A stretch of 64,000 nt of DNA from Saccostrea echinata (lineage: Eukaryota), in the NCBI RefSeq assembly GCF_033153115.1, contig NW_026889751.1, forward strand, positions 32,426,001-32,490,000. The letters run 5' to 3'. The position numbers were made by a program, and so were the translations under genes. The notes beneath the pieces are model-generated. The model was given only the letters and a program-made list of their open reading frames with translations. It had not been told where the DNA came from and did no database searches. Position 1 is the first letter of the stretch; each line of letters opens with the position of its first letter. This document shows, piece after piece, positions 9,307-53,142 of the stretch.

Positions 9307-10072
9307 CTTTATTTTGACAGCATTTCTAAGATATTGAGATATGGACCCCCGTACCAGTGCCCAAAACGTGATGCGATGTGACCTGTGTGAGACGTCTGTG
9401 GTACAGATGCACTGTGATACATGCCATATCAACCTGTGCATAGCTTGTGTGGGAGTTCACTTTTCAACTGATCTCTCGAAACCTCATAAAATTGTTGATT
9501 TCAAGGCTAGGAAATCTACTTTGATTTACCTTAAATTCATGTCACATGATGTGGAAGCATGTGAAATGTACTGTTATCAATGTGACATTCTCGTCTGCAA
9601 CTCATGCATTGCATATGATCAACACCTAGGTCATAAATTTTTTAAAATTTTAGAAGTCTTGAGTAAAAGAAAAGAAAAGATTATCAAGGAAAGTACAGAA
9701 TTAAATGAAACAATCTATCCAACTTACCAGGGTATTGCCAGTGATGTAGAAAAGAGAATAAATCTTATACAAGAGGAATATAAAAAGCTTTCAACAGCCA
9801 TAACAAAACAAGGAGAAAATTGCAAAGAGAAATAAATGAACTTGTCAATAAACTTAAATCTAAAACTGATGAAATGAAAAACAAACAGTTAGAAACTCTG
9901 CAGAAACATTTTGGCGAAAGAAACCAGAAAATCTCTGACATCCAGGATGAAATAAATTCAGTCGATGTTGCTTTAAATTCTACAAATATTTCTGAAGTGT
10001 TCAGTATTTTAAGTACAGTGGATATACACTGGATATCCTGAAAATTACGGTAATTATTCTCTCAATACTTAT

Positions 10073-13000
10073 ATGTTTAGAACCATCTTCATTCTTTTGT
10101 GTGTGCGCTTAATACTGGAGTCATGGGTCATTTATTGTTGCTCGAATTTGTTCTACGAACATATTCAGCTCTTTCACCTTCTCGGAAATAGTTTGTTTTG
10201 GTGCAAAAACTACAAAACTCTACATTATCTCCACGGTAAATTTCTTTATCCCAAGCATCTATATGTAGCATTCATACTTAAACTATATCAGACTCCACAA
10301 AATGCGATGTGTGTATATATGTTAACACTTTTTGTTCTACAAAGTTTGCTTTTCATTTGCATTTATTTTTTGTTCCTTTTTTGTTTATTTTTGTTTGATT
10401 TCCATTCTACTTTGTTTCATTTTTCTCCATTTACTTTTGTTCCAGCCTGTTACTTGCTTACTTTATTTTATTCTATTACTATAGTCCAGGTACATGTAAT
10501 GTTAGTTAGAGATGTCAGTTCAAATGTATTATCATTGATTAGCAATCATTGCCAAAAATATGAACATTATCTTGTTTACTATTCAAAAAGAATCTTTAAT
10601 ATCACAAATCATCACTTTAATATCATTGTGATTACAATGTTACTATTGTGTGGATGTGTGGAAACAAACCCAGGTCCAACAGATTATAAAAAACACGTCA
10701 GTATTGTGCACAATAATGTGTGTAGTTTATTTCCAAAACTTGATATTATTAGAAATGATTTATCAGGAAATGATATAATTGCCATTACTGAAACTCATTT
10801 AGATCAGAGTATTGACAACAAAACAATTTCACTAGATGGTTATTATCAACCAGTTAGAAAAGACAGAAATAGATATGGTGGAGGAGTTGCATTATACATT
10901 TCAACTAGAGTAAATTTTATAGTAAGAAATGATTTAAATTTTTCTGATATTGAAATTTTGTGGGCAGAAATTCATTCACAAAATCAAAAGTTTCTAGTTG
11001 GAGTCATATACAGACCTCCTAACTCTGGGTCTGATTTTTGGGATAAACTTACAAGTACTGTAGAAAGAGCTATAGATACAGAGATGAAATTATTTTTGTT
11101 AGGTGATTTCAATGTAAACATGTTAGCCCCTGGGAACAATACATTTAAAAATCTACTCCTACAACTTAATTTAAGTAATGTTGTCCTAGAGCCTACCAAC
11201 TTCACAACGGATAATGGAACCTGTATAGACTTAGTGTTAACTAATGATCCTAACAAAGTTGAAAGTGTTACAGTTGATGAACCAATCTGTAGTTCTCACT
11301 CACCTGTCTCTATAGAAATTTCATTTCAAACATATAAACAACATGCCTTCAAACGTACAATTAGAAATTATAATAATGCAAATTATCAAGGCCTGAATGA
11401 TGACTTAAAAAATGTCAGTTGGGATGAAAAAGTGTTTACCTCCAATAATATGAATGAAGTCTATCAAAATTTTACATGCACTTACCTACAATTGGTAGAT
11501 AAACATATACCAACAAAGCAAATTACAATACGTCCATCAGATAAACCATATATTACCACAGAAATTCGTAGGAAAATGCGGCAAAGAAAAAGAATACGTA
11601 AAAAAGCAAAGCATACTAAGAATCCATTACACTGGCAAAAATTTAGACAAATACGTAATGAAGTAATAGACCTAGTACGGAATAGTAGGAAAGAATACAA
11701 AATCAAACTTGTTTCTCAACTTATTGACACATCTATTCCACCAGGAAAGTGGTGGCGTATAGCAAAATCTGTTGCAAGGTTAAAGAAACAAAATTCTCCC
11801 CCATCCTCTATTAAATCACAAGATGGTAGAATATTGGTTCACCCAATTGATAAAGCTGAAGAATTTAATAATTTTTTTTCAAATATATCACATATTGAAA
11901 ATGAGCCAGACTTGCCTGAACATGGAGCTGGACCTCCAGAATATTTCTGTGATTTTGAAATAAGTGATCAAGATGTGCTTGATCAGTTAAGCATACTTGA
12001 TCCCTCTAAACCATGTGGACCAGATGGGATTTCCCCCAGAATATTAAAGGAAACCCGTTATTCTATATATAAACCTTTATGTAGGTTATTTAACCTATCA
12101 CTTACAAATAAAGTTCTTCCATACATATGGAAACAAGCACATATTACACCTATTTTTAAAAATAAAGGCTGTCCCCAACAACCTAATAATTACAGACCAA
12201 TATCATTGACTTGTTCTATATGTAAGCTAATGGAAAAAATACTTTTTAAATATATGTTTAATTATATTAAGGAACATGACTTATTGTCTAAGTTCCAGTC
12301 TGGCTTCCAACCTGGGGATTCTACTGTTAACCAATTGGTTGAAATTTATGATAATATTATGTCAAACCTAGACAAAGGCAGAGATATACGCTTTATATTC
12401 TGTGACATTTCCAAAGCTTTTGATAAGGTGTGGCATAAGGGAATGATTTTTAAACTTAAAAACCTTGGTTTTAGAAGTAATATACTGGGTTGGATCGAAG
12501 ACTACCTTACTGAACGACAACAAAAAGTGAATTTGGAAGGTTTTTCATCAGCATATACAACTATAGATGCTGGGGTGCCTCAAGGGTCTGTACTTGGTCC
12601 CTTCCTGTTTTTGTTATACATAAATGATGTAACTAATGATATATCAAGTAATATTCGACTGTTTGCTGATGATACTTCTTTGTTTGCTATTATAGACAAT
12701 GATATTACTAATACAACAATGTCCCTTACTCAAGATCTTGAAAAAATTAGAAATTGGTCCAAGGCTTGGGCTGTTGATTTTAATAGTGAAAAAACTGTTA
12801 ATGTTGATTTTACAAGAAAACACTTAAGTTATCCTGGCATTCAATTTGGTTATGGAGGTGATTATATAAAACAATCAAAAACTCATGTTCATTTAGGGAT
12901 ACAATTTCAGGCAGATGGTTCTTGGAATAATCATATGTCTAATATATATGAAAAGGCATGTAAAAGATTGAATATACTTAGGTTATTGAAACATAGTATA

Positions 13001-37083: not shown

Positions 37084-37846
37084 TCTCCCTCAATTGTATG
37101 CAAGGGAAAGGAACGACAACTCCCGGTATAGACAAAGCTTCCTTTGAGCAGCGCCTTTCGGTAAGAAATGAGAACGAGAAACCTGCAGCGAAGTTTTTTC
37201 ATAATTCAAGGTATATATTTATCCGTTTATCAAGAATGATTTTCTTGGAAATTATTCACCTTCCAGCGATTCTTGAGTTAAGCATAAATTTATTATCAAA
37301 TGAATATATTATTTATTTACATATAAATCGAACGAAAACGAAAGTTTGTCCTGCTGTACGCATTAATGTTGTTTAGTATTTTATATACCCGTGTACTAGC
37401 GATGATGACTTAACAGAATTATAGTCATACTTAATTAATGAATGGTTTATTGTGTTGATCAAAGAAATAATACATGTATAATTTTGGACTTAAGATTCTA
37501 GGCCGGGAACCGCCTCTGAAAACTATTTTATTCCTTTTCAAGATTTAGTAAACAAATAATTTAATACCTTACATGTATCAATATAATTGACATTTACGAG
37601 TGGGTTTCTCAAATGTAGTTTCAATAGATTGAACACTTCTGTAAAGAATATATACATGTAGGAAAGACACAACAACCCTGAGGCTGAAATAGGAAAGTTG
37701 AACAGCATTTTTATTTCATTATGAGTGAAGTAAATACTGCGGAGACCAGCTAATAACAGTATATTGTAGCATATTTTTAAAGAATAAATATTTAAAGAGT
37801 AAATAAAAGTTCTTTTATTATAACAGAGTTTCTGGGATATTGAGGC

Positions 37847-39459
37847 ATGGACCCCCGTACCAGTGCCTAGGACGTGATACTTGTCTTGTCAACCTGTGTA
37901 AGGCCTGTATAGAAGAACACATCTTAACAGGTGAATCCAAAGATCACAAAGTTGTCAAATTTAAGGACATGAAATCTACAATAATTTTCCCTGAATGCAA
38001 GTCACATGCTGTGGAAAAATGTGAAATGTGCTGTAACCAATGTGACATTCCCGTTTGCAACACTTGCATTGCATCTGATCAACACCTAGGTCATAAATTT
38101 TTGAAAATTTTGCAAGTTTTGAGCAAAAGAAAAGATAAATAAAGAATGTACAGAATTAAATGAAATAATCTATCCAATTTACCAGGACATTGCCAGTGAT
38201 GTAGAAAGGAGATTAAGTATCTTACACAAGGAATATGAAAATCTTTCAACAGCCATAACAAAACAAGGAGAAATTTTGCAAAGGGAAATTAAAGAACTTG
38301 TCAATAAACTAAAATCTAAATTTGATGAAATGAAAAACAAAGAGTTAGAAACTCTGAAGAAACATTTTCAATTGATGAAATAAAGTAGAAAATCTCTGAC
38401 ATCCAGGATGAAATCCATTCCATCGATGTTGCTTTAAATTCTACAAATATTTCTGAAGTGTTCAGTATTTTACCTACAGTGGATAAATACAGGACATTTC
38501 CAATGAAAATCAGGTTTAGAGTCCCTAAATTTTCTCCCAATAAAGTACAGGAAGATAATTTGTATAATTTTAAGACTGGTATATTAATAGAAGGGCATGA
38601 ATACAAACTTTTGACAAAGTCAGAGTCACCAGAAGCGGGATCCTCTGAAACAGCTGCTTGATGAACCAGAGACTGTCACCACCATGGACACTGGGTACGG
38701 ATATCTTTACAATGTGGCATGTCTGAGTGATAAAGAAATCTGGACAAGTGGATCGGAAAGTAGTGTGAATCTCCACAGCATCAATCAGGGATCACTACTC
38801 AAGTCTATTACAACTATATCAGGGACACTACCAGAGGACATGTCGGTGACAAAAAGTGGAGATTTAGTTTATACTGATATCAATGATAGAACTGTGAAGA
38901 ATGAGAAGATAGAGAAGGTGATCAGATTACAGAACTGGATATCTTATAGTGTCTGTTGTAGCTATCCTGGGGATCTGTTGGTTACCATGTACAGTGATAA
39001 CAATAACAAGCAATCCAAGGTTGTCCGTTATTCTGGCTCCACAGAAAAACAAAAATTCAGTTTGATGAGACTAACAAGCCTCTCTTCTACTTTGGCAATT
39101 ATAATAATTATATCAGTGAAAATCGGAATCAGGATATATGTGTGTCTGCCAGTGGAGCTAACGCTGTAGTAGTGGTGAATCAGGCCGGAAAACTCCGATT
39201 TAGATACACTGGGCACACTTCTGCTCCTAAGAACAAACTATTCAATCCACTAGGAATCACCACAGACAGTCAGAGTCACATCCTTACAGCTGATTCTTAC
39301 AATGACTGTGTCCACGTCATGGACCAGGATGGACAATTCCTCTGTTACATAGAATGTGGACTGAGTCAAGCATGGGGACTGTGTACAGATACAAATGATA
39401 ATCTCTATGTTACTCAACAGATAAAGAATGAAGTAAAGAAAATCAAATATCAGAAGTGA
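37847..39459 (+). pseudogene. TRIM-like copy 5, early deletion plus several frameshifts and stops
   Basis: ATGGACCCCCGTACC start; deletion between gtgat microhomologies removes the start of B-box1; frameshifts near 38140, 38370, 38648, 39053; TAG near 38386. Confidence 0.92.
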
Positions 39460-39901
39460 ATTTCTGATTCCCAACACTGCAGTAGATACAGTATACAAGT
39501 AGAACAGCAAATGATAATAACTATAGTGTTTTCTATGGTGGCTTACCTGGATGCAGATTCACAATACACTTAGGGAGGCATTCACTGAATGTGAATGGAT
39601 ATTGATTATCTCTATCATATTCTGTAAAGAAATTTTATAAAATATGTATGTTGAAAATGTTGGGTATTATTAAAGTGTAATTTAATTAGAACGTTCATAA
39701 TTCTCTTGAAAATATACGATTGCATTTATTCTTCTGTATAAATACTCCTGGTGTAAGGCACAGTGTATACAATTACAATTTTTATAGGAAATTAGGCCAA
39801 TGTGCACTTATTATACAAAGACAAATAAAAATTTTGAATTATTGTTGTAAACCACTAAAAACTAAAAGTTGCACTCCAAAATCCGCTTTTAAATGCATGC
39901 A

Positions 39902-40574
39902 CCCTTATAAAAAAAAAGTTTCAAAGTTATCACAGTAGTAAATCAAAGTTTTTAAAGTTATAACTATAGTGTCATAATGATTTCTTTAATAAGTCAAAGT
40001 TTTCAAAGTGATCACTCTAGTGTCATTAGTTATCACTGTAGTAAATTGAAGTTTTCAAAGTTATCAATATAGTTAATCAAAGATTTCATAGTTATCACCG
40101 TAGTAAATAAAAGTTTTCATAGTGATCACTATAGCATTTCAAAGTTTTCATAGTTTTCACTATAGTGGCATAGTGATTAGTGTTCACTATTGTAAAATAA
40201 AGTTATCAGTAAAGTAAATCAAATTGTCAAAGTTATCACTATAGTTACATGTAACAATAGTTTTCATAGTGTCAAAGTTATCACTGTAGTTAACTATAGT
40301 TTTCATAGTGTCAAAGTTATCACTGTAGTTAACTATAGTTTTCATAGTGTCAAAGTTATCACTGTAGTTAACTATAGTTTTCATAGTGTCAAAGTTATCA
40401 CTGTAGTTAACTATAGTTTTCATAGTGTCAAAGTTATCACTGTAGTTAACTATAGCTTTCATAGTGTCAAAGTTATCACTGTAGTTAACTATAGTTTTCA
40501 TAGTGTCAAAGTTATCACTATAGTTAACTATAGTAAACAATAGTTAACTATAGTTTACTATAGTATTTTTAGGA
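39902..40574. mobile_element. CMC/EnSpm-like element related to 6473-7571 (opposite orientation) with a 39-bp tandem array
   Basis: ca|cccttataaaaaaaa ... tatagtttactatagtatttttagga|ca; unit tagttttcatagtgtcaaagttatcactgtagttaacta, about 7 copies at 40258-40530. Confidence 0.8.
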
Positions 40575-41434
40575 CAGTCTCATGCAGGAAATTAGACACG
40601 AACTACATGTACTTTAAGTTAAAACTTGGTATGTGATAACATGAATTATTTATGCCGGCTTCGGAAGAGTTTTGGATGAAAAAGAAAATGATAAACACTT
40701 CTCAAAATTTATGCACGTGTTTAAAGACAGAATTTTTATATCTATGTTCATTTGTATGTTAGTGTTGTATGTACGTGCGTATGTACGAGATGTATGAACG
40801 TTTTTATAAACACTTTTTGTAAAAGGCAACCATATTTAATAAAATATATCCAGAGTTATCTAAATAAACAAATTTCTCTCAGCAAGAGACTTTCGTCACA
40901 TGAAATCCAGAAGATATAAGGCAGGGCTTGACTCGACACTACTATGCACTCCTTAAATTGGGGATGAATTTATTTTTTTTTTCCTTCTATGTCTGATATT
41001 TAAATTTTAAAAGTGATATATCATACTGTCTATAAAGATTATATTAGTTCTTGGGTTCCATCAGATACAGTGTATCTACTCTGGATGGTTTAGGGAAATA
41101 AATCCTTTCTGCTGTTATGTCACATTATGCTGAGTTGTCAGAATGTCCCAAAGAACTTTATTCACTAAACTTCTACACATATACTTGCAATTAGTACCAT
41201 TCCTGTATACATTCTTAACATTTTATGTAATATGACAGGCCTGTAGTATCCTTTTTGAAAGGGGGTAGCCCCCTCCCTCCTGCTATGACGTATTACTTTA
41301 ACATAGTATACATTTGATCCTGTATACAATTGATCAACGGTCCTATTCCCTGTTTTAGACTCAATGTAATTGAGTGTAAATGGGCTGTAATGCCTAAGTT
41401 TAATACTGACTGAATCATGGAAACTATAAAACTA

Positions 41435-42396
41435 CGAGGGGTGATAAAAAAGTTCGCGAACTATCTCCATATTTACAAAACCACAATTCAGATCAGAATG
41501 AAATTTGGCACACATATAGTAATACACATGTTCTATAAATAACAGATGTTATATAATGTTTTGATCCGTGTTTGTGACGTCACAAAGTGAAAATGACGTC
41601 AATATGTAGGTGACTTGTGACAAAAAATGGTTGACTCACTCGTACTCGAGAAACAAACGGCTGTAAAGTTTAACGTATATCTTGGAAATTCCTTTGCAGT
41701 AGAATATGATAATTTGTACAAGGTTTATGAAGACAAAAAACTTACCAGAAGTTCAATCAGTAATTGGATTGATTGTTTTAGTGAAGGCAGGGAGATGGTT
41801 AAATGTAATATTTGTTTTATTACCCAGCGAAAGCAAGCCGGGGAAAAGATGTTTCCTTAGTTGAGCAATTTGTTATGAAACCTCGCAAACTTACGATTAG
41901 AAAAATAGTTGAATATCTGAACAATAATATAATTATTAAATCCCTAAAATATCGTTTACTTAAGAATTTAAACATATGAGATATGATAAAAAGAAGGCGC
42001 CCATACTTTATCCACATTGGATAAACGACGCTCCCGAGACAGAGGACTCGGGTTGTGATGGTCACCATGCTAATTCTGGGAAGGGATATCCTTGTCCACC
42101 TATCCTATTGCCGAGATTTGGCCATTTCTGACAGATGAACTGTTCTTGTTATAAAAAATAATTTGCATGGTAAGAAATATAAGACTCGGAAAAATCTTTT
42201 AGCTTCTGTGAACAAACCGCTCAGGAGCATGTCACGTGACCGCCTTGATCAAGTGATTCGCGCATGGGCAAAACAATGGCAGATGTGCATTAAAATCGGA
42301 GAAGACCACTTTAAAAAATAATAAACACTGAAACCTCATTTTATTTCTTTTAAAGAAGTAATTCAATTAGTTCGCGAACTTTTTGATCACCCCTCG
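41435..42396 (+). mobile_element. Mariner-derived deletion element with transposase remnants
   Basis: ta|cgaggggtgataaaaaagttcgcgaacta TIRs. N-terminal HTH remnant (EKQTAVKF...YKVYEDKKLTRSSISNWIDCFSEGRE) and ILVHLSYCRDLAISD resembling the mariner YSPDLAPSD motif. Confidence 0.9.
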
Positions 42397-42820
42397 TATG
42401 TCCATTCTTTTGTCAAATTTGCAAAATGATTTGGTAATCATATTCACGCAAAACATAAAAATAAAATAACTGCGATATGTGCTATGAAATAAAAGATACT
42501 GTGTAGATGTAGTTATATTTATCTCTAAAGCTCATTTTTAATGTAACCTATTTAATGTCTCCTACAATAAATTGTCCAAATTATCTTGATTCTGTTCCTT
42601 TTTTTTTCTTTTGGATAATTGTTTTCAAATAAACACAAAATAAATTCCGTTTAGGTTACATTATAGAAATTAAATTTATTGGCATTCGTTCACTTTAAAG
42701 TGTTCAGTATTCAGTATGTAGCTAACGACAAAGTGGTTTCAAAAATGCAACTAATAATCAATTGACTGAAATATTTAAACCTCCAGAATAGCCATAAGAG
42801 TACTAAGAAAGCAATTAAAA

Positions 42821-43130
42821 ATTGATTGACTGTATGTTATTTAACGTCCCATTCATGAATTTTTCACTTATATAGCGACGTCACCGTATGCCGGTGAAGG
42901 GCATCAAATTTAGACCTATCCTCTGCACTCAGGGCCATTGAGCAATGAGGGTTCTTTATCATGCCAACACCTACCTTGACAAAGGACCTCGGTTTTTAAG
43001 GTCTCATCCGAAAGACCCGTGACTTTCACTTCTAGTACCTGACGCTTGGCGACGGAATAGTCACTACCTATGTTTACGTCTTAGGTTTGACGCGGCGGGG
43101 TGAACAAGAATCGAACCCAGGCCTCCGGGT
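42821..43130 (-). mobile_element. tRNA-derived SINE, 5' end missing
   Basis: attgattga tail, aaggtctcatccgaaagaccc core, B box tcgaaccc on the minus strand. Confidence 0.85.
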
Positions 43131-45909
43131 ATATTATTATAATAATACATTATATTCACCTGCACGTGACCTTCCAGGTGAATGTAAGGATTCATTTTTT
43201 CTACATTGGTCTAAAAATAGATCGGGAAATTCCAAATTGATACAATAGTTTTTGGAAAACTATTTCACTTGCTACCGACTTCCGCTCAGGTAAAAATAAA
43301 ATTAGGGAATATATAATATGTGGTTTTGGGGAGGGTACAGGGAACCCAACCCCCAACCCCCCCCCCCCCCCGAAAACTCTTTTGGAACATAAATTTTTAC
43401 TTTAAATTTAGACTTAAATATTCAATGAAGGGCTGGTCCCCCAAAATGGACCTTGATCCCCCAACTCTAACTCCACCCCTACTTCTAAACAAAATTTGAA
43501 GTTAATAGAATTCTCTTTTCGTTGGGGCTAATTAAAGATTTTTTTATCAGCTGTCATTTTTCCCCTTCCTTCCAAAATCTATCATTTGAAAGAATCTGAT
43601 ATTATTTCCTTTTTTAGAGCAACTAAAGTAGATTTAAGAAGAATTAAATTAATACGACTGGTAATGTTAATTTAATCCTATTGCTTCTCTCATTGCATTT
43701 GGATGTGCTAGGCTTCAGCAAATGTAAACAAGTAATATTGCATGAACTGCTAAATGAGTTTCATTCATTTCATCATTGTATCATATAATTAAACAATTAT
43801 TGTTGTTTTTTCAGTCAATACGATGATTTAGCCACCTTTGAAATAAAATATTCACCTCGCCCCTCGGGCTCGGCGAATATTGTACTCCTCAGGTGCTTAA
43901 ATCAGCGCACTGACCACGAGAACAGCAGTAATTGTTTAATATATTTTAGGATAAGAGAATTATATAAAGTCTATGATAATTTATAGTTATTTATGATGTA
44001 GATGCATTTAATATGCTGGAGCTTGCCTATTCCCTCAGAATGGTATGCTATTGTTTTTATGATCTATTGTTTATTTACAAAAGGTATATACGCAGACTTC
44101 CTAGAGAATATCGCAGTGCACTCTGTGCCTTCACTTTTTTGAACTACCAATATATGACGTCATAATGAAAAATGACGTCAGGTCAATGCAAACTTGAGCT
44201 ATTATGACGGGGAAAGTTTCAAAAACTCTACGCCTTATTTCAAATGGCATGTTAGATATTAGAACGCTACTGCAAATTCAAATTCACATGCACAAAGTAT
44301 AAATTCCAAGGGAGTATGGATTATGTTAAATGAATGTAAGAGTTATCTCCCATTATGCAGTATTGTGTATAATATTGGATTGTGCATTAATGATTTTATG
44401 ATATTCTCAATATTTCAGGGCAAATATTATTTATCTGTTAAATTAACGACAGTACACAAACCCTAACAGGAGTTGTTTGTTTGTATGTAATACCATCGTA
44501 TGCAAAAATCCTGTTACAATAAGGCCTTTTTATTGATAAATAATATGATTAAAAACTTTTTCTAATATAATTTTTCACCATTTACATTTTTCCAAGAATT
44601 ATGTATACCAAGCCTTGACAGAGATGTATGTGGGAGCGTAGCGGGAATGACAATTCGGAATAGAGATTGCCTGGGGTAGAAGTTTATTTTCTTTTAAATT
44701 AAGAAAACTGAAAATTTAGGATCCACTCCCTCAACTCTGCTAACGTTAAATGTCTCGCCAGGGAATTCTTTTAGTGGAATATGGGTGATTTGCATCAATT
44801 ACACCTGCATTGACTCCATCGCTGTCGAAAATAGCCGGTATTTCTTGGCATGCTTTTTAACAATATATGATTCCAAATTTTTTCTACTGATCTTTCAAAA
44901 CTTTAAGAAAGGAAATGTGCATTCATTTAATGTTTCGTAAATGCATATGATGTAGAAAACGCGTGAAATGTACTGTAATCACTGTGACATAATTAATGCA
45001 ACACTCACCCAACCACCCACCCATCGACACAACCGCGTTACTTTATCCCCTCCAACTCCGCTGCAAGGGAACAATTACATGTAGGGTGGCATGGAACACC
45101 GAACGAAACTTCTCCTACATAATTATTTGCCTAAAGTAGTAAGATTTTAAAACCCCTATCTTTCAGTATGTTAAATTGTAATTTTAATAATTTATTCATT
45201 AATAAGCATATCAAAAGATTCCAAAAAATTGTTTTCCTATATAGTCTCTTTTTAAAGCCTAATAGTGTTGATAAAAAAAAACATGGCATGAAATATTTCT
45301 TTTCTTAATTTTCAACGGGGCTGAGCGAGTCTATTCACTTTCAATCAGGAAAGGAACGGCAACTCTCGGTAATGATAAAAGGTTTTGCGACCATCCCCTT
45401 CGGTGAGAAATTAGAACGACAAACCCGCAACAATTTTTTTGTAATTAAAAAAGGTAAATATTTTTATCTGTATGAAGTATGATATTTCAAGAAAGTATTC
45501 GAGTAGCAGCGATTCTTAAGTCAAACATTTATTCATTATCAAATGTATTAGATTTCATGATTTGAACAAAAACGAAAGTAGGCCAGCTGTACTAATGTTG
45601 TTTAGTATTTTGTTAATCCTACTACTAGGAATGTTGACATGATAGAATTATAGTCATAATAATTAATGATCAAATAAATCATACATGTATTATTAAGAAA
45701 TTGAAAAATTGATCCTGAAACAATCCATAGGATCAAGTTCTGAGATAAACAATATTGATGCCTGCTTGTGAATGTTATTGTATTTTCCCCCAATGATCAC
45801 CTGAATTTGATCAACAAATAATTTAACAGCTTATCAGCAATATATTTGTTATTTAGGGATAGGTTTCTCAAATAATTCCAATACATGGAACACTACTATA
45901 TAGATGAAA

Positions 45910-46088
45910 TATGTGGAGATAACGAAAAGTATTCGAGCTCAAAAGTCCATTAAACATTGCAAAATAGGTGCAGAGCAAACTCCGACCTCCAAAACATCAG
46001 AGGTGGGATCAGGTGCCATGGAGAAATGAGCATCCCCTGCCGACCGGTCACACCCGCCGTGTGCTCCTTGTCATGATCGGGAAAAAAC
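45910..46088 (-). mobile_element. Short retroelement-like repeat, copy 3, in intron of TRIM copy 6
   Basis: Flanked by direct repeat agatgaaa (45902-45909, 46089-46096); absent from paralogous introns. Confidence 0.75.
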
Positions 46089-46284
46089 AGATGAAACCAC
46101 CCTTGGGATAAGATGTATTATAATTATATGAAAATTGACCATTCTTCATTATTAAATAAATATTGCATTAACTGACATGCATGTATGTTCAGCAAATAAG
46201 AGTTTAATGTAAAATAATTTTAAAGAATGTGAATTCAAATGGTAAATAAATATAATTATAACAGAGTTTCTGAGATATTGAAGT

Positions 46285-46537
46285 ATGGACCCCCGTACTA
46301 GTGCCCAGGATGTGATGCGATGTGACCTGTGTGAGACCGCTGTGGTACAGATGCACTGTGATACATGTCTTGTCAACCTGTGCAAGGCCTGTGTAGGAGA
46401 GCATTTTTCTGCTGATCTTTCATAACCACATACATGTAAATTGTTGATTTCAAGGCTAGAAAATCTACTTTGATTTACCCTAAATGCGTGTCACATGATG
46501 TGGAAACCTGTGAAATGTACTGTAATCAATGTGACAT
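46285..46537 (+). pseudogene. TRIM-like copy 6, only the 5' ~250 bp retained
   Basis: MDPRTSAQDVMRCDLC..., in-frame TAA at 46423, then joins 3'-flank sequence (cgttatgctgaattgt, also ~25705 and ~41120). Confidence 0.9.
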
Positions 46538-47081
46538 GCATTGTTACGTTATGCTGAATTGTCAGGTTGATCCAAAGTAGAAATCTATTCACATGACTTC
46601 TACATATATTTATTTACAGTTACATTGCCATGCGCTGATCCAGAAGGGGGGATTTGCAGAGTTATTTGAAGTATATACTGAAGCAAATGAAAATTGACTC
46701 TGGACCCCCCCCCCCTTTCTAGAAAACGTGGACCCACCACCACACAACCACCATAAAATAAGTTTTTATTGTGTTTGGATATGGACTTTACGTTTCCTGG
46801 ATCCAAGCCTTATTGCTATATATATATATATATATATTACGTAATATGTTGTATCGCTTTACCATAATATATTTTTTATGCATATGCCTAACATTAAGTA
46901 AATGAAACTGTGGAAGTCTTGATTAGGGGACACATCCCCTATCTCAGACTCCTATAGAGTCTAATTTATTGTAAAATCTGTTAGATGTAAATAAGTATAA
47001 TTTATTTTCTGACGGGCTGTAATCCCCAAAGTTACACTGACTAAAACATGTAAACTATAATCTATATCTCTAATATGAGTA

Positions 47082-47912
47082 CGAGGGGTGATCAAAAAGT
47101 TCGCGAACTAATTGAATTACTTCCTTAAAAGAAATAAAATGAGGTTTCATTGTTCATTAAATTTTAAAGAAGTCTTATATTTCTTACCATGCAAGTTATT
47201 TTTTATAACAAGAACAGACCATTTGACAGAAATGGCCAAATCTCGGCAATAGGATGGGTGGATAGGGATATCCCTTCCCAGAATTAGCATGGTAACCATC
47301 ACAACCCGAGTCCTCTGTCTCGGGAGCGTCGTTTATCCAATGTAGAAAAAGTATGATTGCCTAATTTTTTTCATATCTCATATGTTTAAAGTCTAAAGTA
47401 AACGATATTTTAGGGATTTAATAATTATATTATTGTTCAGATATTCAACTATTTTACTAATTGTAACTTGGCGATCTTTTAAAATAAATTGCTCAATTAG
47501 GGACACATCTCTTTACCGGCTTGCTTTCGCTGGGCAACAGAACAAACATCATTTTTAAACATCTCTCTGTCTTCACTAAAACAATCAGATCCGATTAATG
47601 ATTGAACTTCTGGGAAGTCTTTTGTCTTCATAAATCTTGTACAAATTATTATATTCTACTGCAAAGGAATTTCCGAGACATATTTTAAACTTTACAGCCG
47701 TTCGTTACTCGAGTACGACTGAGTCAACCATTTTTTGTCACAAGTCACCTACATATTGACGTCATTTTCACATTGTGACGTCACAAACATGGAGCAAAAC
47801 ATTATTCAACATTTTCTATTTATAGAATATGTGTATTACTATATGTGTGCCAAATTTCATTCTGATCTGAATTGTGGTTTTGTAAATATAGAGATAGTTC
47901 GCGAACTTTTCG
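47082..47912 (-). mobile_element. Mariner-derived element, inverted second copy of 41435-42396
   Basis: Reverse-complement match throughout; TA TSD; one TIR and an internal segment partly deleted. Confidence 0.9.
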
Positions 47913-48627
47913 TATGTATTCATATTCACATCAAAAGTAACTTTAAAAAACCGAATATCATGTTCTATAAAATAATAGATACTGTGCATTGATATGACAT
48001 AGAAACATTTAATTCTAAAGCATTTTTAATGTACCCTAGTAAACGTCTCCAACAAATCGTCCAAATCAGTTTAATTTTCTTCCTGTTTTAGATAATTGGT
48101 TTTAAATAAACAGAAAATAAATATGTTTCCATTTAGGTTAAAATACTGTAATTAAACTTCGGAATTCACTCAATTTTAAGTTTTCAGTATTCAGAATGTA
48201 CCTAACAACACAGGGGAAAAACTGGGCTTTTGATATCTGGGCTTTCCTACTGTTTCAAAAAATGCAATTAAAACGTTTCAATATATAGAAATATTTAAAC
48301 CTCCAATGTAACCATTAGAGTACGGAGAAAGCAATTAAAGATATTGGCGTTTAAAGAACATAATCTGCACCACGTGTGATCTTCGGGAGAACCTTGTTGA
48401 TTTTGCTTCTTTCAGTTCACTGATTGGTTATAAGTGTTAGAACCTGTCTGATAATCCCGTAGTCAGAGATAGGACTGTTTATATTAATAAGAGGCCTTAT
48501 AGTAAGAGATTAATTTATCATTATACATGTACTGTAAACAGAATATTTAGATATCTCAAAAACATGACATGTTAAAATGAACAACATTCAGTTCAAAAGC
48601 CTTCATTTATGAATTTATTTATTTATT

Positions 48628-48661
<34 letters not shown>

Positions 48662-50426
48662 AGACAATTTATTGCTTATATCAGAATCTCCATATGGGCT
48701 ACAACATATACTGTCTTGACTCATTGCAAAGATACTGTAGTGACTGGAAGTTAAAAGTTAATACATACAAAACTAATGCTATGATATTTTCTAATTAGAA
48801 CCTGAAGTGAGTTGTTAAACAATGAGGTATAAAGAAAATTATTTAATTTTGTTAACGAATATAAATAGTTGCGTGTTGTCCTCAACAGAAATGGTAAATT
48901 GAAATAAACAAGTGAGAATTTAGTAAATAGAGCATTAGGAAGGCATATTTTACAATCAAATCAAACCTACAAACTGAAACAATTTCAGTTTAGAACTCTG
49001 GAAAAATTCACTTCAAGATTTATGAATTATGCATTATACCAATTTTGACTTACGCTTCATAAATTTAGATAAGAGATTTTAAACAATTCAATTGATAAAT
49101 AAAAGACTTTTGACAAAACTCCATTTGAAAAAAAAATCAAAATTTCATTTAATTTAGCAGACAGGATGGTGTTTTCTGATCATCCCATTATTTTCAGAAT
49201 ATATGAATTTTTGCATATATATCTTTAAAGATCACGGAAAATTGCCTCAAATCAGGAGAACTCGATCAAACTTACATTTACATCACGGCATATTTAGACG
49301 ACAAAAAAAATGGGAAAACTTGAATGGCAAAATTATATACGACGAATACTTAATGATTTTATTGATTCAAACGCTAAAGCAGTATCTACAAATGGTTTTG
49401 CAAATAATTTGAAAAATGTTTCGAGAATATAGTTTTCAGAGGCATTAAAAACATAAAAGAAAAGGCATCGGAAAATTGGCATTCTACAGCAAATTCATCA
49501 CAAAATCAAAACAAACTTGATATTGCATGTATAGTGTATTAACTGTCACACAGTTGTTGATGATGAATTGAACATCATTTTGTTTTTCTACTTGTATGTT
49601 CTCTATATAACCAACTGTGAAGTGAATATTGTACACTTCTTTAAAAATTCAAAATTTTCTGCTGATCTTTCAAAACTCCATAATACTGATTTTAAGCAAG
49701 GAAATGTACATTCATTTAATGCATCCAAAATGCAAAATGCACTGTAATCAATGTGACATCAATGTGAAATCATGTATGCAACACTAACCCACCCATGCAC
49801 CCACCGCCACAAGCGCGTTACTATGTCCCCTCCAACTCCTCTGAGAGGGAATACTTACATATAAGGTGGCATGGGATACCAGACGAAACTTCTCCTACAT
49901 ATTTATTTGTCTAAAGTAGTACGATTTGAAATACCCCACCTTTCAAATTGTAATTTTAATAATACATTAATTAATTAGCATATCAAAAGATACATAAAGT
50001 TTTTTTTTCCTTTGTATAACACCTTCTTTAAATATTAATAGTGTTGATAAGAAAAAATGACAAGAAATCTCTCTTAAAATTTTCAAGGATAGAAACGGGC
50101 TGAGAAAGGAACGACAACTCTAGATATAGATAAAGGGTTTGCCACCAACGACCTCCTATGAGAAATTTGAAGAGAAACTAAATTTTTGTCATAATTCAAG
50201 GTATAATTTTTTTTCTCTGTATGAAGAATTTTTTTTAGAAAGTTTTCGACTAGTAGGGATTCTTGAGTCAAACATACATTCATTATCAAATGTACATACA
50301 TTAAATTCCATGATTCAAACAAAACGAAAGTAGACCAGATGTACTTCTTGTTCCCATCTACTAGCCATGTTGACATGATAGAGGCATAGTCATTGTAATT
50401 AATGATCACACAAAGCATGCATGTAT

Positions 50427-50533
50427 CACAGGGGCATCTTATCCACCCTGTTCTTTATTACACATATAATAAATACACAAGTGTGCATTTATTTAGTTAG
50501 TTTATTATATGTGTGATAGAGAATGCCCCTGTG
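50427..50533. mobile_element. 107-bp palindromic MITE, 7-bp TSD catgtat (P-like)
   Basis: cacaggggca...tgcccctgtg with inner inverted repeat acacatataataaa/tttattatatgtgt; single catgtat at the paralogous site (~45684). Confidence 0.75.
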
Positions 50534-50622
50534 CATGTATATTGATAAAGAAATTGAGAAATTGATACTAAAACAATTTGATCAACAGATCCTCAATCTA
50601 GGTCGAGATCCACCATTTTGAT

Positions 50623-51158
50623 CATAGGCACTCCCCAGCTTAGGCCAAAAACAATAATAATTCTTGTTTCCTGCTACCAGCCTGAAAAAATAGGGTAGGA
50701 AGGTAGGAAAATTATTTTGTTTTATATTTTTATTTTATTTTTTTCCGACGACATTTTTTGAATATGAACTAATACAAGATCAAATTAAACATGTCATAGG
50801 TCAATATTGTCTTTTAAAATTAAATTTCATGTCTTTTTATGCACAACTCAAGTGGTATTTTATGAAAGTGCATATTTAAAACAAGAATTTCATGAAATGC
50901 TTGTTTTGTGTTAACACTGATATCAATTACGGTGACAGAACAATGAAATTCTGGAAAATTTCGATTTTTTTTTCTTCCTAAGCATGCTAAACTTTAAAAA
51001 AAACTTCAGGGTCGGGTGCAAAAAAAAATAGGGTAGGTGGGGTAGCAGGAAACAAGACCATTATTTTTTTGGCCTTTATTGTTAATTGTATAAAAAGTAT
51101 ATATCTACTACACTATAAACATATTATTTTATAACAATTAAGCTGGGTAGTGCCTATG
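50623..51158. mobile_element. hAT-like MITE (8-bp TSD attttgat) containing a nested TIR element (~50642-51075)
   Basis: Outer TIR cataggcact..ccagctt / aagctgggtagtgcctatg; inner TIR aggccaaaaa...tcttgtttcctgctacc / ggtagcaggaaacaaga...tttttggcct. Empty site ccaccattttgatgcct at ~21748. Confidence 0.8.
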
Positions 51159-51474
51159 ATTTTGATGCCTGCATTTGAAACTTATTGTATTTTTCCTAAG
51201 GATTATCACCTCAATTTGGTAATTTGATAACTTAGCATTTAGCACATGTAGTAGCAGTTAGCAATATACTCGTCATTTATGAGTAGGGACACTGCATTAC
51301 AGATCACCCTGGAGATAAAATAAGAAAGTTGACCTTTTTATTAAATAAATAATTCATTAAATGATGTACGTTGACAAGTTAATGACAGTATTTTGTAGCT
51401 TAATTTAAGAGAATTTGAATTCAAATGATAATTAAGCATCTTTAATTGTAACAGAGTCTCTGAGATATTGAGGC

Positions 51475-53142
51475 ATGGACCCCCGTACCAGTGCCCAGGA
51501 CGTGATGCGATGTGACCTGTGTGAGACCGCTGTGGTACAGATGCACTGTGATACATGTCTTGTCAACCTGTGTAAGGCCTGTGTGGGAGAACATTTTTCT
51601 GCTGATTTCTCAACACCACATAAAATAGTTGATTTCAAGGCTAGGAAATCTACTTTGATTTACCCTAATTGTGTGTCACATGATGTTGAATCATGTGAAA
51701 TGTACTGTAACGAATGTGACATTCCCGTCTGCAACACTTGCATTGCATCTGATCAACATCTAGGTCATAAATTATTGAAGATTTTAGAAGTTTTGAGTAA
51801 AAGAAAAGAAAAGATTATGAAGGATCGTACAGAATTAAATGAAACAATCTATCCGACATACCAGGGCATTGCCTGTGATGTAGAAGAGAGATTATGTCTC
51901 TTACAAAAGGAATACAAAAAGCTTTCAACAGCCATAACAAAACAAGGAGACATTTGGCAAAGGGAAATTAATGAATTTGTCAATAAACTAAAATCTAAAA
52001 CTGATGAAATGAAAAACAAACAGTTAGAAACTCTGCAGAAACATTTTGATGAAGTAAAGCAGAAAATCTCCGACATCCAGGATGAAATCAATTCAATCGA
52101 TGTTGCTTTAAATTCTACAAATATTTCTGAAGTGTTCAGTATTTTGTCTCCAGTGGATAAATACAGAAAACTTCCGAAGAAAATCATGTTTTCTGTCCCT
52201 AAATTTTCCCCCAATAAAATACAGGAAGATCATTTGTACAATTTTAATCCAGGTATTTTAGAAGAGCATGAATACAACCTGATAACAAAATCAGAATCAC
52301 CAGAAGCTGGATCCTTTCCTCCAGTCAAACAGCTGCTTGATCAACCAGAGACTGTCACCACCATAGACACGGGGTATAGAAACCTTTATAATGTGGCCTG
52401 TCTGAGTAATGAAGAAATCTGGACAAGTGGAAATGGCAGCATCTTGAAACTTTTCAGCATCAATCAGGGATCACTACTCAAGTCAATCACAGCCAAGTCA
52501 TGGACAAGACCAGAGGGCATCGCAGTGACAAAAAAGGGAGATCTAGTCTATACTGATCAGTTTGATAAAACTGTGAACATTTTGAAGAATGAGAAGATAG
52601 AGGAGGTGATCAAACTACAGAACTGGGTGCCTAGCGGTCTCTGTAGTACCTATTGTGGGGACCTGTTGGTAACTATGTACATTCATAACAAGCAATCAAA
52701 GGTTGTCCGTTATTCTGGATCTACAGAAAAACAAACCATTCAGTTTGATGAGACTGGTAAGCCTCTCTTTTCGTTCGGTACTTACGATAATTTTATCAGT
52801 GAAAATCTGAACCTTGATATCTGCATGACTAACAGTGAAACAAAAGAAGTAGCTGTGGTCAGTCAGGCCGGGAAACTGAGATTCAGGTACACTGGACATA
52901 CTATTGCTCCAAAGAACCAACCATTCAGTCCACGAGGAATCACCACAGACAGTCAGAGTCACATCCTTACAGCTGATTATAACAATCACTGTGTCCACAT
53001 CATAGACCAGGATGGACAGTTCCTCCGTTACATAGACTGTGGACTGAGTAAACCGTATGGACTGTGTACAGATAAAAATGATTATCTGTATGTTGCTCAA
53101 CAGTTTGAGAAAGAAGTGAAGAAAATCAAATACCTGAAGTGA
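51475..53142 (+). CDS. RING-less TRIM-like protein copy 7, intact 555 aa
   Basis: Same domain order and Cys/His spacing as copy 2; uninterrupted ORF; acceptor taacag at 51454. Confidence 0.95.
   Translation: MDPRTSAQDVMRCDLCETAVVQMHCDTCLVNLCKACVGEHFSADFSTPHKIVDFKARKSTLIYPNCVSHDVESCEMYCNECDIPVCNTCIASDQHLGHKLLKILEVLSKRKEKIMKDRTELNETIYPTYQGIACDVEERLCLLQKEYKKLSTAITKQGDIWQREINEFVNKLKSKTDEMKNKQLETLQKHFDEVKQKISDIQDEINSIDVALNSTNISEVFSILSPVDKYRKLPKKIMFSVPKFSPNKIQEDHLYNFNPGILEEHEYNLITKSESPEAGSFPPVKQLLDQPETVTTIDTGYRNLYNVACLSNEEIWTSGNGSILKLFSINQGSLLKSITAKSWTRPEGIAVTKKGDLVYTDQFDKTVNILKNEKIEEVIKLQNWVPSGLCSTYCGDLLVTMYIHNKQSKVVRYSGSTEKQTIQFDETGKPLFSFGTYDNFISENLNLDICMTNSETKEVAVVSQAGKLRFRYTGHTIAPKNQPFSPRGITTDSQSHILTADYNNHCVHIIDQDGQFLRYIDCGLSKPYGLCTDKNDYLYVAQQFEKEVKKIKYLK

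What the first reader, a model, noticed from the sequence alone, without database searches (positions are those of the whole stretch)
9341..53142. Tandem RING-less TRIM-NHL array with hypervariable loops on one propeller face: candidate diversifying innate-sensor system
Seen: B-boxes and propeller strands are highly conserved among copies, while substitutions and indels concentrate in short loops. Just before blade starts: IDVDCWFFPQLYN/TGYRNLYN/TGYRYLYS/TGYDRYLYN/TGYMELYN; GNRPEN/WTRPEG/GTLPED; [30 protein letters not shown]. After the conserved Asp of strand b: TDYDGR/TDQFDK/TDTSNR/TDFYGR/TDKHDR; SDWGAR/TNSETK/VDSGAR; ADIAND/ADYNNH/ADAYNN/ADSYND. Established: in NHL propellers such as Brat and LIN-41/TRIM71, the d-a and b-c loops form the top ligand/RNA-binding face, and TRIM5-type restriction factors diversify their C-terminal recognition domain. 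Inference: a birth-and-death array of pathogen or RNA sensors under diversifying selection, signalling without their own RING. Bivalve TRIM expansions are known in general; whether this surface-restricted variability has been described cannot be judged from here.
Basis: partly seen in the sequence, partly recalled or inferred. Interest (0 to 1): 0.8.

Follow-up and report, generated by a model that had tools for sequence, protein, structure and literature searches.

The report
Oyster propeller receptors with hypervariable face
This rock-oyster window holds a tandem array from a family of over 100 RING-less B-box/coiled-coil/NHL-propeller genes, in which about 22 residues on the propeller's known ligand-binding face change far faster than neutral while the rest stays conserved, the signature of a large recognition repertoire whose targets are unknown.

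Summary
The window (Saccostrea echinata, contig C2) carries six same-strand, single-exon B-box1/B-box2/coiled-coil/NHL genes plus two fragments. Two are intact. One has lost its ATG but is otherwise open. Three are pseudogenes, one split by a LINE with a 13-bp target-site duplication. The N gaps lie between copies.

An in-frame TGA two codons before every ATG rules out a RING exon.

With 48 intact paralogs, my own codon models give M1a/M2a LRT 728. For the NHL part alone, M1a/M2a is 771 and M7/M8 is 798, with about 9% of sites at omega about 5. The N-terminal half gives LRT 7.3 and no sites.

All 19 sites with posterior above 0.95 sit in d-a or b-c loops or the adjoining strand ends, which define the NHL top surface. 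None lies in the bottom half. Sites learnt without the window copies give dN/dS 1.6-2.1 among the window copies.

The family also shows inter-paralog recombination: scaffolds are nearly identical at synonymous sites while hot sites differ.

Ligand, immune role and signalling remain inferred, and expression was not shown. An unchecked scan note (s1-806611) reports similar genes elsewhere in this genome.

The parts
9341..10029 (+). Copy 1, 5' part (B-box1, B-box2, coiled coil up to about aa 228); pseudogene with one frameshift near 9818
   Evidence: tblastn with copy 6, 80-90% identity in two frames; ORF 9341-9835
10030..14147 (+). LINE inserted in copy 1. It has an intact 1254-aa ORF (10073-13837) with endonuclease and reverse-transcriptase domains. 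It is flanked by a 13-bp target-site duplication at 10017-10029 and 14148-14160.
   Evidence: Pfam RVT_1 1e-32 and Exo_endo_phos 8.6e-13; the same 13 bases read at both junctions
14148..15130 (+). Copy 1, 3' part (linker and NHL propeller); at least two frameshifts and an internal stop
   Evidence: tblastn pieces in frames 1, 3 and 2; translation of the tail shows a stop before the last 12 codons
19132..19359 (.). Assembly gap (N), intergenic
   Evidence: N run located by script; no family match touches it
20224..20442 (.). Assembly gap (N), intergenic
   Evidence: N run located by script; the nearest family-like sequence starts 409 bases downstream
20851..20949 (+). 33-aa B-box-like relic
   Evidence: tblastn, 58% identity to aa 54-83 of copy 6, E = 1e-4
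22111..23793 (+). Copy 2, intact 560-aa B-box1/B-box2/coiled-coil/NHL gene
   Evidence: Open ORF; Pfam zf-B_box and NHL; 79% identical to copy 6
30421..32038 (+). Copy 3, pseudogene: 7 in-frame stops, a frameshift near 31880 and a premature end
32510..34216 (+). Copy 4. The start codon is ATT; the next ATG is at 32540 (aa 11); the frame is otherwise open for 558 aa. The RefSeq model (P0005) joins it to pseudogene copy 5.
   Evidence: Sequence read; ORF; tblastn of P0005
37876..39459 (+). Copy 5, pseudogene: first 25 aa missing, several frameshifts
   Evidence: tblastn pieces in frames 1 and 2, 56-73% identity
46285..46538 (+). 5' fragment (aa 1-83, B-box1 and the start of B-box2) with a frameshift; it keeps the conserved upstream sequence
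51475..53142 (+). Copy 6, intact 555-aa gene, used as the reference for numbering
   Evidence: Open ORF; Pfam; AF2 model
51511..51768 (+). Copy 6 B-box1 (aa 13-49) and B-box2 (aa 66-98); zinc ligands invariant across 48 paralogs
   Evidence: Pfam zf-B_box, two stretches; invariant C/H columns
51760..52113 (+). Copy 6 coiled coil (aa 96-213), followed by a disordered linker (aa 214-286) with no filamin domain
   Evidence: AF2: one helix 96-213, then pLDDT below 50 over 214-281; no filamin hit in Pfam
52333..53139 (+). Copy 6 six-bladed NHL propeller (aa 287-555). Hot sites are at aa 302, 303, 320, 345, 347, 363, 385, 387, 402, 405, 436-438, 454, 457, 485, 487, 502, 526, 528, 543 and 544.
   Evidence: AF2 pLDDT around 90 or higher, 24 strands; TRIM2/TRIM3 NHL are the best solved matches; site models

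Best explanation
The array is a local clade of a family of more than 100 intronless, RING-less TRIM-like genes (B-box1, B-box2, coiled coil, disordered linker, six-bladed NHL propeller) in the oyster Saccostrea echinata.

Shown:
- The N-terminal assembly module and the propeller scaffold are under purifying selection.
- About 22 positions, two clusters per blade, are under strong diversifying selection. One cluster flanks the conserved Pro just before strand a. The other follows the conserved Asp at the end of strand b.
- Together they ring the top surface, the face that NHL domains use to bind ligands.
- Every one of the 48 paralogs sampled has its own combination at these positions.
- Genes are born by tandem duplication, die by frameshifts, stops and transposon insertion, and exchange sequence by recombination or gene conversion. 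Even so, the hot sites stay different.

Inferred:
- Each paralog is a cytoplasmic recognition protein with its own ligand specificity on the top face.
- The B-boxes and coiled coil mediate dimerisation and higher-order assembly, or pairing with RING-bearing relatives.
- The driver is antagonistic coevolution with viruses, other pathogens or selfish elements.
For: Architecture:
- Pfam zf-B_box (two stretches) and NHL score above their cut-offs; no RING.
- AF2 gives helix 96-213 and a 24-strand propeller at high confidence.
- The best solved relatives are TRIM3/TRIM2 NHL: phmmer E = 3e-23, Foldseek TM 0.79.
- An in-frame TGA lies two codons upstream of ATG in all six copies aligned.

Family size:
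- 81 scored matches out of 1845 first-look candidates.
- 127 exact hits to a B-box1 DNA signature against 1 in the control.

Selection:
- Pairwise dS has a median of 0.41, so it is not saturated.
- M2a vs M1a LRT 728, with 4.6% of sites at omega 4.1.
- With partition-specific trees, the NHL part gives LRT 771 and the N-terminal part 7.3 with no sites.
- M8 vs M7 LRT 798.
- A grid model with synonymous-rate variation finds the same sites.
- 19 of 19 sites lie in the top half of the propeller and 0 of 112 residues in the bottom half are selected (Fisher p = 3e-5).
- Nine of the 19 sites sit in gap-free neighbourhoods.
- Tree-free sister pairs give omega 1.21 in top loops, 0.39 in bottom loops and 0.25 in the B-boxes.
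- Cross-validated hot sites give dN/dS 1.6-2.1 among the window copies.
- The same positions are the most variable in 108 proteins from several oyster species.

Binding-site character: W (x5.3), R (x3.2) and Y (x3.2) are enriched at hot sites.

Definition of the top surface: PMC4015489.

Context: TRIM genes are a dominant class among genes linked to OsHV-1 resistance in Crassostrea gigas (PMC6971885, PMC9437489).
Against: - No ligand, no expression evidence and no induction data exist for these genes. The read data could not show transcription.
- The oyster papers speak of TRIM genes in general, not of this subfamily.
- The codon models are my own implementation, with branch lengths fixed from an M0 fit plus one scale factor.
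- Recombination is demonstrably present and inflates such LRTs. The tree-free and cross-validated tests reduce this worry but do not remove it.
- Face assignment rests on strand topology from a predicted model.
- Half of the window's copies are dead.
Confidence: 0.6

Rival explanations
1. The proteins are diversified RNA-binding regulators, like Brat and LIN-41. Each recognises a different endogenous or transposon-derived RNA element. Diversification would reflect regulation or genome defence rather than pathogen sensing.
For: - NHL top surfaces of Brat and LIN-41 bind RNA (PMC4015489 and PMC5908797).
- The domain order B-box1/B-box2/coiled-coil/NHL without a RING is that of Brat (PMC3503706 lists Brat as TRIM-like).
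- Bottom loops are consistently acidic (mean -7.2) and top loops are on average slightly basic (+1.8), as described for Brat.
- Arg is enriched 3.2-fold at hot sites.
Against: - Net charge of the top loops ranges from -7 to +10 between paralogs, and of the hot sites from -3 to +4. Many members therefore lack the basic platform said to mark RNA-binding TRIM-NHL domains.
- Omega of about 5 at 22 sites in over 100 paralogs is not expected for housekeeping regulators.
Confidence: 0.2
2. The family provides specificity for endogenous protein partners. Examples are substrate adaptors for ubiquitin ligases, or self/non-self and gamete recognition. Paralogs would then diverge through subfunctionalisation or intraspecific conflict.
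For: - Trp/Tyr/Arg enrichment is typical of protein-protein interfaces (general knowledge).
- Fungal NWD/HET WD40 propellers show the same top-face selection together with concerted evolution, and they serve allorecognition (PMC1805685).
Against: - There is no signal peptide or membrane segment in the ORFs, so extracellular gamete or allorecognition roles are unlikely. This is my reading of the translations, not a formal prediction.
- No partner is known.
Confidence: 0.12
3. The signal is an artefact: relaxed constraint in flexible loops, plus misalignment around indels, plus recombination, mimics positive selection.
For: - Ten of the 19 sites have indel columns within two positions.
- Recombination between gene halves is strong.
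- Site 437 loses support once synonymous-rate variation is allowed.
Against: - Nine sites lie in gap-free stretches.
- Bottom loops are equally exposed yet have omega 0.39 and no selected sites.
- The N-terminal half of the same recombining genes gives LRT 7.3 and no sites.
- Tree-free, cross-validated dN exceeds dS at hot sites in the window copies.
- Whole-propeller pN/pS reaches 2.4-3.0 in pairs whose scaffolds are nearly identical.
- Relaxation alone cannot push omega above 1.
Confidence: 0.04

Closest known systems
Brat / NCL-1 type TRIM-like NHL proteins (subfamily C of Marin 2012, PMC3503706)
   Same: Both have B-box1, B-box2, coiled coil and a six-bladed NHL propeller, and no RING. The top surface formed by the b-c and d-a loops is the functional face. 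The bottom face is acidic.
   Different: Brat is a single conserved developmental gene with a basic RNA-binding top. Here there are over 100 fast-turning-over paralogs with tops that are hypervariable in residues and charge. Orthology to Brat was not tested and is unlikely.
TRIM2/TRIM3/TRIM71 (class VII TRIM-NHL E3 ligases)
   Same: These are the closest solved NHL domains by sequence and by fold. RefSeq names the paralogs 'TRIM71-like' and 'TRIM2/3-like'.
   Different: The family here has no RING and no filamin domain, only about 24% identity in the propeller, and a large lineage-specific expansion.
TRIM5alpha and teleost finTRIMs (PMC2657112)
   Same: Both are clustered TRIM multigene families with a conserved N-terminal module and positive selection concentrated in surface loops of the C-terminal recognition domain.
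   Different: The recognition domain there is B30.2/SPRY and a RING is present. Here it is an NHL propeller and the RING is absent. Antiviral function has been shown for TRIM5alpha, and virus induction for trout finTRIMs, but neither has been shown here.
Podospora HNWD (het-d/het-e) WD40-repeat NLR family (PMC1805685, PMC2873952)
   Same: A beta-propeller is the variable module. A few positions per repeat on the interaction face are under positive diversifying selection. Sequence is exchanged between family members so scaffolds stay alike.
   Different: The repeats there are WD40, not NHL. The effector and NACHT domains are fungal STAND-type. Ten genes are involved rather than over 100. Repeat-number instability and RIP operate there; neither was looked for here.

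Membership tests
TRIM / RBCC family | N-terminal RING finger | tested here: not met
   No RING family hit in Pfam. The ORF starts 12 residues before B-box1. A conserved in-frame TGA lies two codons upstream of ATG, downstream of an acceptor-like AACAG, in all six copies aligned, so no upstream coding exon can join in frame.
TRIM / RBCC family | One or two B-box zinc fingers | tested here: met
   Pfam zf-B_box at 36-42 bits (cut-off 24.1), with two stretches in copies 2 and 6 and one in copy 4. C13 C16 C28 C33 C36 H40 H49 (box 1) and C66 H69 C78 C81 C86 C89 H95 H98 (box 2) are invariant in 48 paralogs.
TRIM / RBCC family | Coiled coil after the B-boxes | tested here: met
   AF2 predicts one continuous helix at 96-213 with pLDDT about 78-87. 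Dimerisation itself was not tested.
Class VII TRIM-NHL (TRIM2/3/71) | Filamin/ABP280 domain between the coiled coil and the NHL | tested here: not met
   No filamin hit. Residues 214-281 are predicted disordered.
NHL repeat propeller (PF01436) | Six NHL repeats forming a six-bladed propeller of four-stranded blades | tested here: met
   Pfam NHL at 28-48 bits (cut-off 20). 24 strands at high confidence. TRIM2/TRIM3 NHL are the top hits by sequence (E = 3e-23) and by fold (TM 0.79).
RNA-binding TRIM-NHL (Brat, LIN-41) | Positively charged top surface | tested here: inconclusive
   Net charge of the top loops ranges from -7 to +10 across paralogs, with a mean of +1.8. The bottom loops are always acidic. 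This is a residue count, not an electrostatic calculation.
Diversifying TRIM restriction-factor type (TRIM5alpha, finTRIM) | Positive selection focused on surface loops of the C-terminal recognition domain | tested here: met
Diversifying TRIM restriction-factor type (TRIM5alpha, finTRIM) | B30.2/SPRY recognition domain | tested here: not met
   The C-terminal domain is NHL.
Diversifying TRIM restriction-factor type (TRIM5alpha, finTRIM) | Antiviral activity or induction by infection | not testable with these tools
   Only contig-level public runs were available and they were inconclusive. The literature concerns C. gigas TRIM genes in general.
Concerted-evolution propeller repertoires (fungal HNWD) | Sequence exchange between family members together with selected diversity at interaction-face positions | tested here: met
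   - The N-terminal and NHL partitions reject each other's trees (delta lnL 1990 and 152).
- 30 pairs have significantly uneven four-fold divergence along the gene.
- In four of the six pairs compared, homology ends at the CDS borders.
- Hot sites differ at 14-20 of 22 positions in pairs with scaffold dS of 0.025-0.04.

The most novel reading that the evidence does not exclude
Oysters may keep a germline, antibody-like repertoire of intracellular NHL-propeller receptors, in which a dedicated or strongly biased process renews the binding face. The scaffold would be homogenised across loci megabases apart, while whole hot codons are replaced.

Supporting observations:
- 51% of differing hot codons carry 2-3 nucleotide changes, against 10% elsewhere, in pairs with propeller pS below 0.06.
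- Whole-propeller pN/pS reaches 3.

This would imply either short-tract exchange of loop cassettes between paralogs and pseudogenes, or serial selective sweeps at the same codons. It would amount to a diversity-generating regime not described for NHL domains or for molluscan immunity.
Probability: 0.2. Interest if true: 0.85.

Novelty: new variant of a known kind. Interest (0 to 1): 0.7.

Why it matters
Oysters have no adaptive immunity, yet they resist a heavy viral and microbial load. TRIM genes recur in screens for resistance to ostreid herpesvirus, without any molecular rationale so far.

This work shows that a large RING-less B-box/NHL subfamily concentrates strong diversifying selection on the known ligand-binding face of the propeller. 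That gives a concrete, testable candidate for a specific intracellular recognition repertoire. It names the roughly 22 residues per protein to mutate or swap.

It also extends the principle seen in TRIM5alpha and finTRIMs (conserved assembly module, variable recognition domain) from B30.2 to the NHL fold. And it adds an animal parallel to the fungal WD40 non-self repertoires.

Tried and rejected
- **Assembly gaps.** Checked first. Both are intergenic and no frame crosses them.
- **Hidden RING exon.** Rejected because of the conserved in-frame TGA before every ATG.
- **Expression.** One run search and one read lay-down gave only short, multi-copy contig pieces at low depth, with no way to tell RNA from DNA. 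The result is inconclusive.
- **Prior description.** Nine full-text searches found general statements on bivalve TRIM or B-box expansions and on TRIM genes in OsHV-1 studies. They found nothing on NHL top-face selection in molluscs. Subscription journals are not covered.
- **Antisense gene as the cause of low synonymous divergence in the propeller.** The antisense frame is only modestly longer than in synonymous-shuffled controls (median 101 vs 75 codons, 95th percentile of the null 122). It is not open in all paralogs. Not supported.
- **General constraint on synonymous sites.** Rejected as the sole cause, because the window copies have ordinary propeller dS (0.27-0.38) and the N-terminal/NHL ratio varies from below 1 to above 6 between pairs.
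- **Loop-cassette sharing between unrelated paralogs.** 167 pairs share exactly one multi-site loop with identical codons, but I could not separate this from chance or common ancestry.
- **Whole top-loop class in tree-free sister pairs.** Omega is 1.21, only marginally above 1 (p = 0.06). The class includes conserved Pro, Gly and Asn scaffold residues.

Full report
**What is in the window**

The window is G000:C2:32426001-32490000, near the end of a 33.26-Mb contig in a 923-Mb genome. [quoted passage not shown]

tblastn with the 555-aa ORF at 51475-53142 finds six copies and two fragments of one gene, all on the + strand:

| Copy | Coordinates | State |
|---|---|---|
| 1 | 9341-15130 | Pseudogene, split by a LINE |
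| relic | 20851-20949 | 33-aa B-box-like fragment |
| 2 | 22111-23793 | Intact, 560 aa |
| 3 | 30421-32038 | Pseudogene |
| 4 | 32510-34216 | Start codon lost, otherwise open |
| 5 | 37876-39459 | Pseudogene |
| 5' fragment | 46285-46538 | B-box1 and start of B-box2 |
| 6 | 51475-53142 | Intact, 555 aa |

- Copy 1 has frameshifts and is split by a LINE at 10030-14147. The LINE has an intact 1254-aa endonuclease/reverse-transcriptase ORF and a 13-bp target-site duplication.
- Copy 3 has seven in-frame stops.
- Copy 5 lacks its start and is frameshifted.
- Copy 4 reads ATT where the others read ATG, and its next ATG is ten codons in. RefSeq's model for it (P0005) is a chimera with copy 5.

The two N runs (19132-19359 and 20224-20442) lie between copies 1 and 2. 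No reading frame crosses them. A copy lost inside a gap cannot be excluded.

**What the protein is**

- Pfam finds the B-box zinc finger (two stretches in copies 2 and 6, one in copy 4) and NHL repeats above their cut-offs. It finds no RING and no filamin domain.
- Across 48 intact paralogs, the Cys and His residues at the spacing expected for B-box1 and B-box2 zinc ligands are invariant or nearly so.
- AlphaFold2 on that alignment gives three parts: a single long helix at 96-213, a disordered linker at 214-281, and a confident 24-strand, six-bladed propeller at 287-555, with 10-residue block pLDDT of 78-96, mostly 88 or higher.
- The nearest solved structures are the NHL domains of human TRIM3 and TRIM2: phmmer E = 3e-23 and Foldseek TM 0.79 at 24% identity. 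TRIM71, Thin and Brat follow.
- Upstream of every copy, an acceptor-like AACAG lies about 20 bases before the ATG. An in-frame TGA lies two codons before it. The coding sequence is therefore a single exon, and no RING-coding exon can be spliced on in frame.

The architecture matches the RING-less TRIM-like protein Brat, not the class VII ligases whose names RefSeq gives to the paralogs (PMC3503706).

**The family**

- The whole-genome search scored 81 matches out of 1845 first-look candidates. Nearly all lie on C2 between 16 and 32.6 Mb, are 58-80% identical and are open.
- A degenerate DNA signature for the first B-box1 motif hits 127 places, against 1 for the reversed control. Smaller clusters lie on other contigs.
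- Relatives are numerous in S. cucullata, Ostrea edulis and Crassostrea.
- In the full-length tree the three open window copies form a clade of their own.

**Is the variability on one face?**

The model's strand order, checked against the NHL repeat motif (strand a ...G-I-x-x-D, strand b ...D, strand c, strand d), assigns every inter-strand loop. By definition, the b-c and d-a loops form the top surface of an NHL propeller, and the a-b and c-d loops form the bottom (PMC4015489). The C-terminus lies on the bottom face in TRIM2 (PMC9634614). This agrees with the model, in which the chain ends with strand c of blade 6.

| Class | Mean entropy (bits) | Columns with gaps |
|---|---|---|
| Top loops | 1.47 | 56 of 118 |
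| Bottom loops | 0.47 | 3 of 49 |
| Strands | 0.60 | 11 of 156 |

The entropy difference between top and bottom loops gives p = 2.6e-9. I had no access to the model's coordinates, so the face assignment is topological, not geometric.

**Is it positive selection?**

Pairwise synonymous divergence has a median of 0.41, so it is not saturated. No site-model package was installed, so I wrote a GY94/F3x4 likelihood. Branch lengths were fixed from an IQ-TREE codon fit, with one free scale factor.

| Data | Test | LRT | Selected class |
|---|---|---|---|
| Whole gene | M1a vs M2a | 728 | 4.6% of sites, omega 4.1 |
| N-terminal half, own tree | M1a vs M2a | 7.3 | no site above 0.95 |
| Propeller, own tree | M1a vs M2a | 771 | 8.7% of sites, omega 5.2 |
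| Propeller, own tree | M7 vs M8 | 798 | 9.5% of sites, omega 4.8 |

- M0 gives omega 0.53.
- A FUBAR-like grid that lets the synonymous rate vary returns essentially the same sites. The exception is 437, which it does not support.
- The 19 mapped whole-gene sites with posterior above 0.95 are 302, 303, 320, 345, 347, 363, 387, 402, 405, 436, 437, 438, 454, 487, 502, 526, 528, 543 and 544.
- Fifteen lie in top loops. Four lie in the top-proximal ends of strands a or b. None lies in the bottom half of the propeller (0 of 112 residues; Fisher p = 3e-5). None lies outside the propeller (p = 8e-7).
- Nine of them have no gap within two columns.
- Each blade contributes two clusters: the residues on either side of the conserved Pro before strand a, and the one or two residues after the conserved Asp that ends strand b.

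**Controls that need no tree**

- In 14 independent sister pairs, pooled dN/dS is 1.21 for the structure-defined top-loop class, which includes conserved scaffold residues. It is 0.39 for bottom loops, 0.50 for strands and 0.25 for the B-boxes.
- Hot sites learnt from the 45 paralogs outside the window were then applied to the three window copies. Hot-site dN over propeller dS is 2.06, 1.56 and 2.08 (binomial p = 0.004, 0.033 and 0.0013; the three pairs are not independent). The window array itself is therefore diversified at these positions faster than neutral.
- In 108 proteins from several oyster species, 20 of the 24 most variable propeller positions are on the hot list.

**Character of the hot sites**

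- Pairwise identity is 16% at the hot sites and 79% over the rest of the propeller.
- All 48 paralogs have different signatures.
- Trp, Arg and Tyr are enriched 5.3-, 3.2- and 3.2-fold. This is typical of binding hot spots (general knowledge).
- Net charge of the top loops ranges from -7 to +10. The bottom loops are always acidic. A uniformly basic RNA platform, as described for Brat and LIN-41, is therefore not a family trait, though some members could bind RNA.

**An additional finding: mosaic evolution**

- The N-terminal and propeller partitions reject each other's trees (delta lnL 1990 and 152).
- In 30 of 1128 pairs, four-fold-site divergence differs between the two halves at p below 1e-4. 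For example, L026 and L030 are 8 Mb apart and show 0.22 against 0.00.
- In such pairs, alignable DNA stops at the borders of the coding sequence.
- Propeller pS is about 0.03-0.04, yet 14-20 of 22 hot sites differ.
- Whole-propeller pN/pS reaches 2.4-3.0.
- 51% of differing hot codons carry two or three nucleotide changes, against 10% elsewhere.

The simplest reading is inter-paralog gene conversion that homogenises the scaffold, while selection keeps the hot sites different. This resembles the fungal HNWD WD40 family (PMC1805685). Serial sweeps at the same codons, or short-tract exchange of loop segments, are not excluded. The window copies show even synonymous divergence and alignable flanks, so they look like ordinary, older tandem duplicates.

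**Interpretation**

Shown:
- The architecture.
- The size and turnover of the family.
- Purifying selection on the assembly module and the scaffold.
- Strong diversifying selection confined to the ligand-binding face.
- Recombination between paralogs.

Inferred:
- Each paralog recognises a distinct ligand.
- The B-boxes and coiled coil assemble the proteins, or pair them with RING-bearing relatives.
- The selective agent is a pathogen, a virus or a selfish element.

Context from C. gigas: TRIM genes make up about a third of the genes differentially expressed in families resistant to Pacific oyster mortality syndrome (PMC6971885). Ten TRIM genes shift allele frequency with herpesvirus mortality (PMC9437489). 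Neither paper identifies this subfamily. The public runs I could lay on copy 6 gave only short, multi-copy contig pieces, so transcription is not shown.

**Novelty**

The loci are annotated in RefSeq, and bivalve expansions of B-box and TRIM genes are reported in general terms (PMC8382680). Positive selection in TRIM recognition domains is classic for B30.2 (PMC2657112). Nine full-text searches found no description of face-restricted diversifying selection in an NHL propeller, or of this oyster subfamily. The library does not cover subscription journals. I class the finding as a new variant of a known kind.

An unchecked note from this scan (s1-806611) reports RING-less B-box/NHL genes next to cGAS-like genes on another piece of this genome. 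I did not examine it.

Noticed in passing
window 10030-14147: A LINE with an intact 1254-aa ORF (endonuclease plus reverse transcriptase) and a perfect 13-bp target-site duplication (10017-10029 and 14148-14160). It looks like a recent, possibly still active element. Its 3' end has no long poly(A).
   Followed up: partly
window 32891-34213, 37825-38079 and 39118-39456: RefSeq protein P0005 (LOC133178295, 783 aa) is a chimeric gene model. It joins copy 4, whose ATG is lost, to pieces of pseudogene copy 5.
   Followed up: partly
loci L020, L026, L030, L034, L004, L038 (contig C2, 22-32.6 Mb): The propeller-coding halves of paralogs up to 8 Mb apart are almost identical at synonymous sites (pS 0.03-0.04). 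Their N-terminal halves differ by about 22% at four-fold sites, and their flanks do not align. Differing hot codons often carry 2-3 nucleotide changes. The mechanism is unresolved: gene conversion with selection, serial sweeps, or short-tract cassette exchange.
   Followed up: partly
window 40252-40534; also 39929-40166, 6552-6785 and 7278-7519: There is a 39-bp minisatellite (7.3 copies, 98% matches). Related 30-31-bp tandem arrays that appear to share a motif occur at three other places in the window, probably parts of one repeat family.
   Followed up: no
window 53565-54030: A 142-bp tandem repeat (3.3 copies) lies just downstream of copy 6. It attracts very high depth and many rearranged joints in all four public runs laid, so it is a high-copy repeat.
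   Followed up: no
window 62884-63345: A 153-aa ORF (TTG start as listed) matches the FR47-like/GNAT acetyltransferase family (PF08445, E = 7.8e-9). It may be an exon of a neighbouring gene.
   Followed up: no
window 52696-53160 and 23464-23811, minus strand: Long antisense ORFs overlie the last blades of copies 6 and 2. Across 48 paralogs this antisense frame is only modestly more open than in synonymous-shuffled controls, and it is not always open, so an overlapping gene is not supported.
   Followed up: yes
alignment A1, aa 1-105 versus aa 287-555: Median pairwise dS is 0.70 in the B-box region, 0.40 in the coiled coil and 0.28 in the propeller scaffold. Part of this may come from NG86 bias at two-fold Cys/His codons, and part from uneven gene conversion.
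   Followed up: partly
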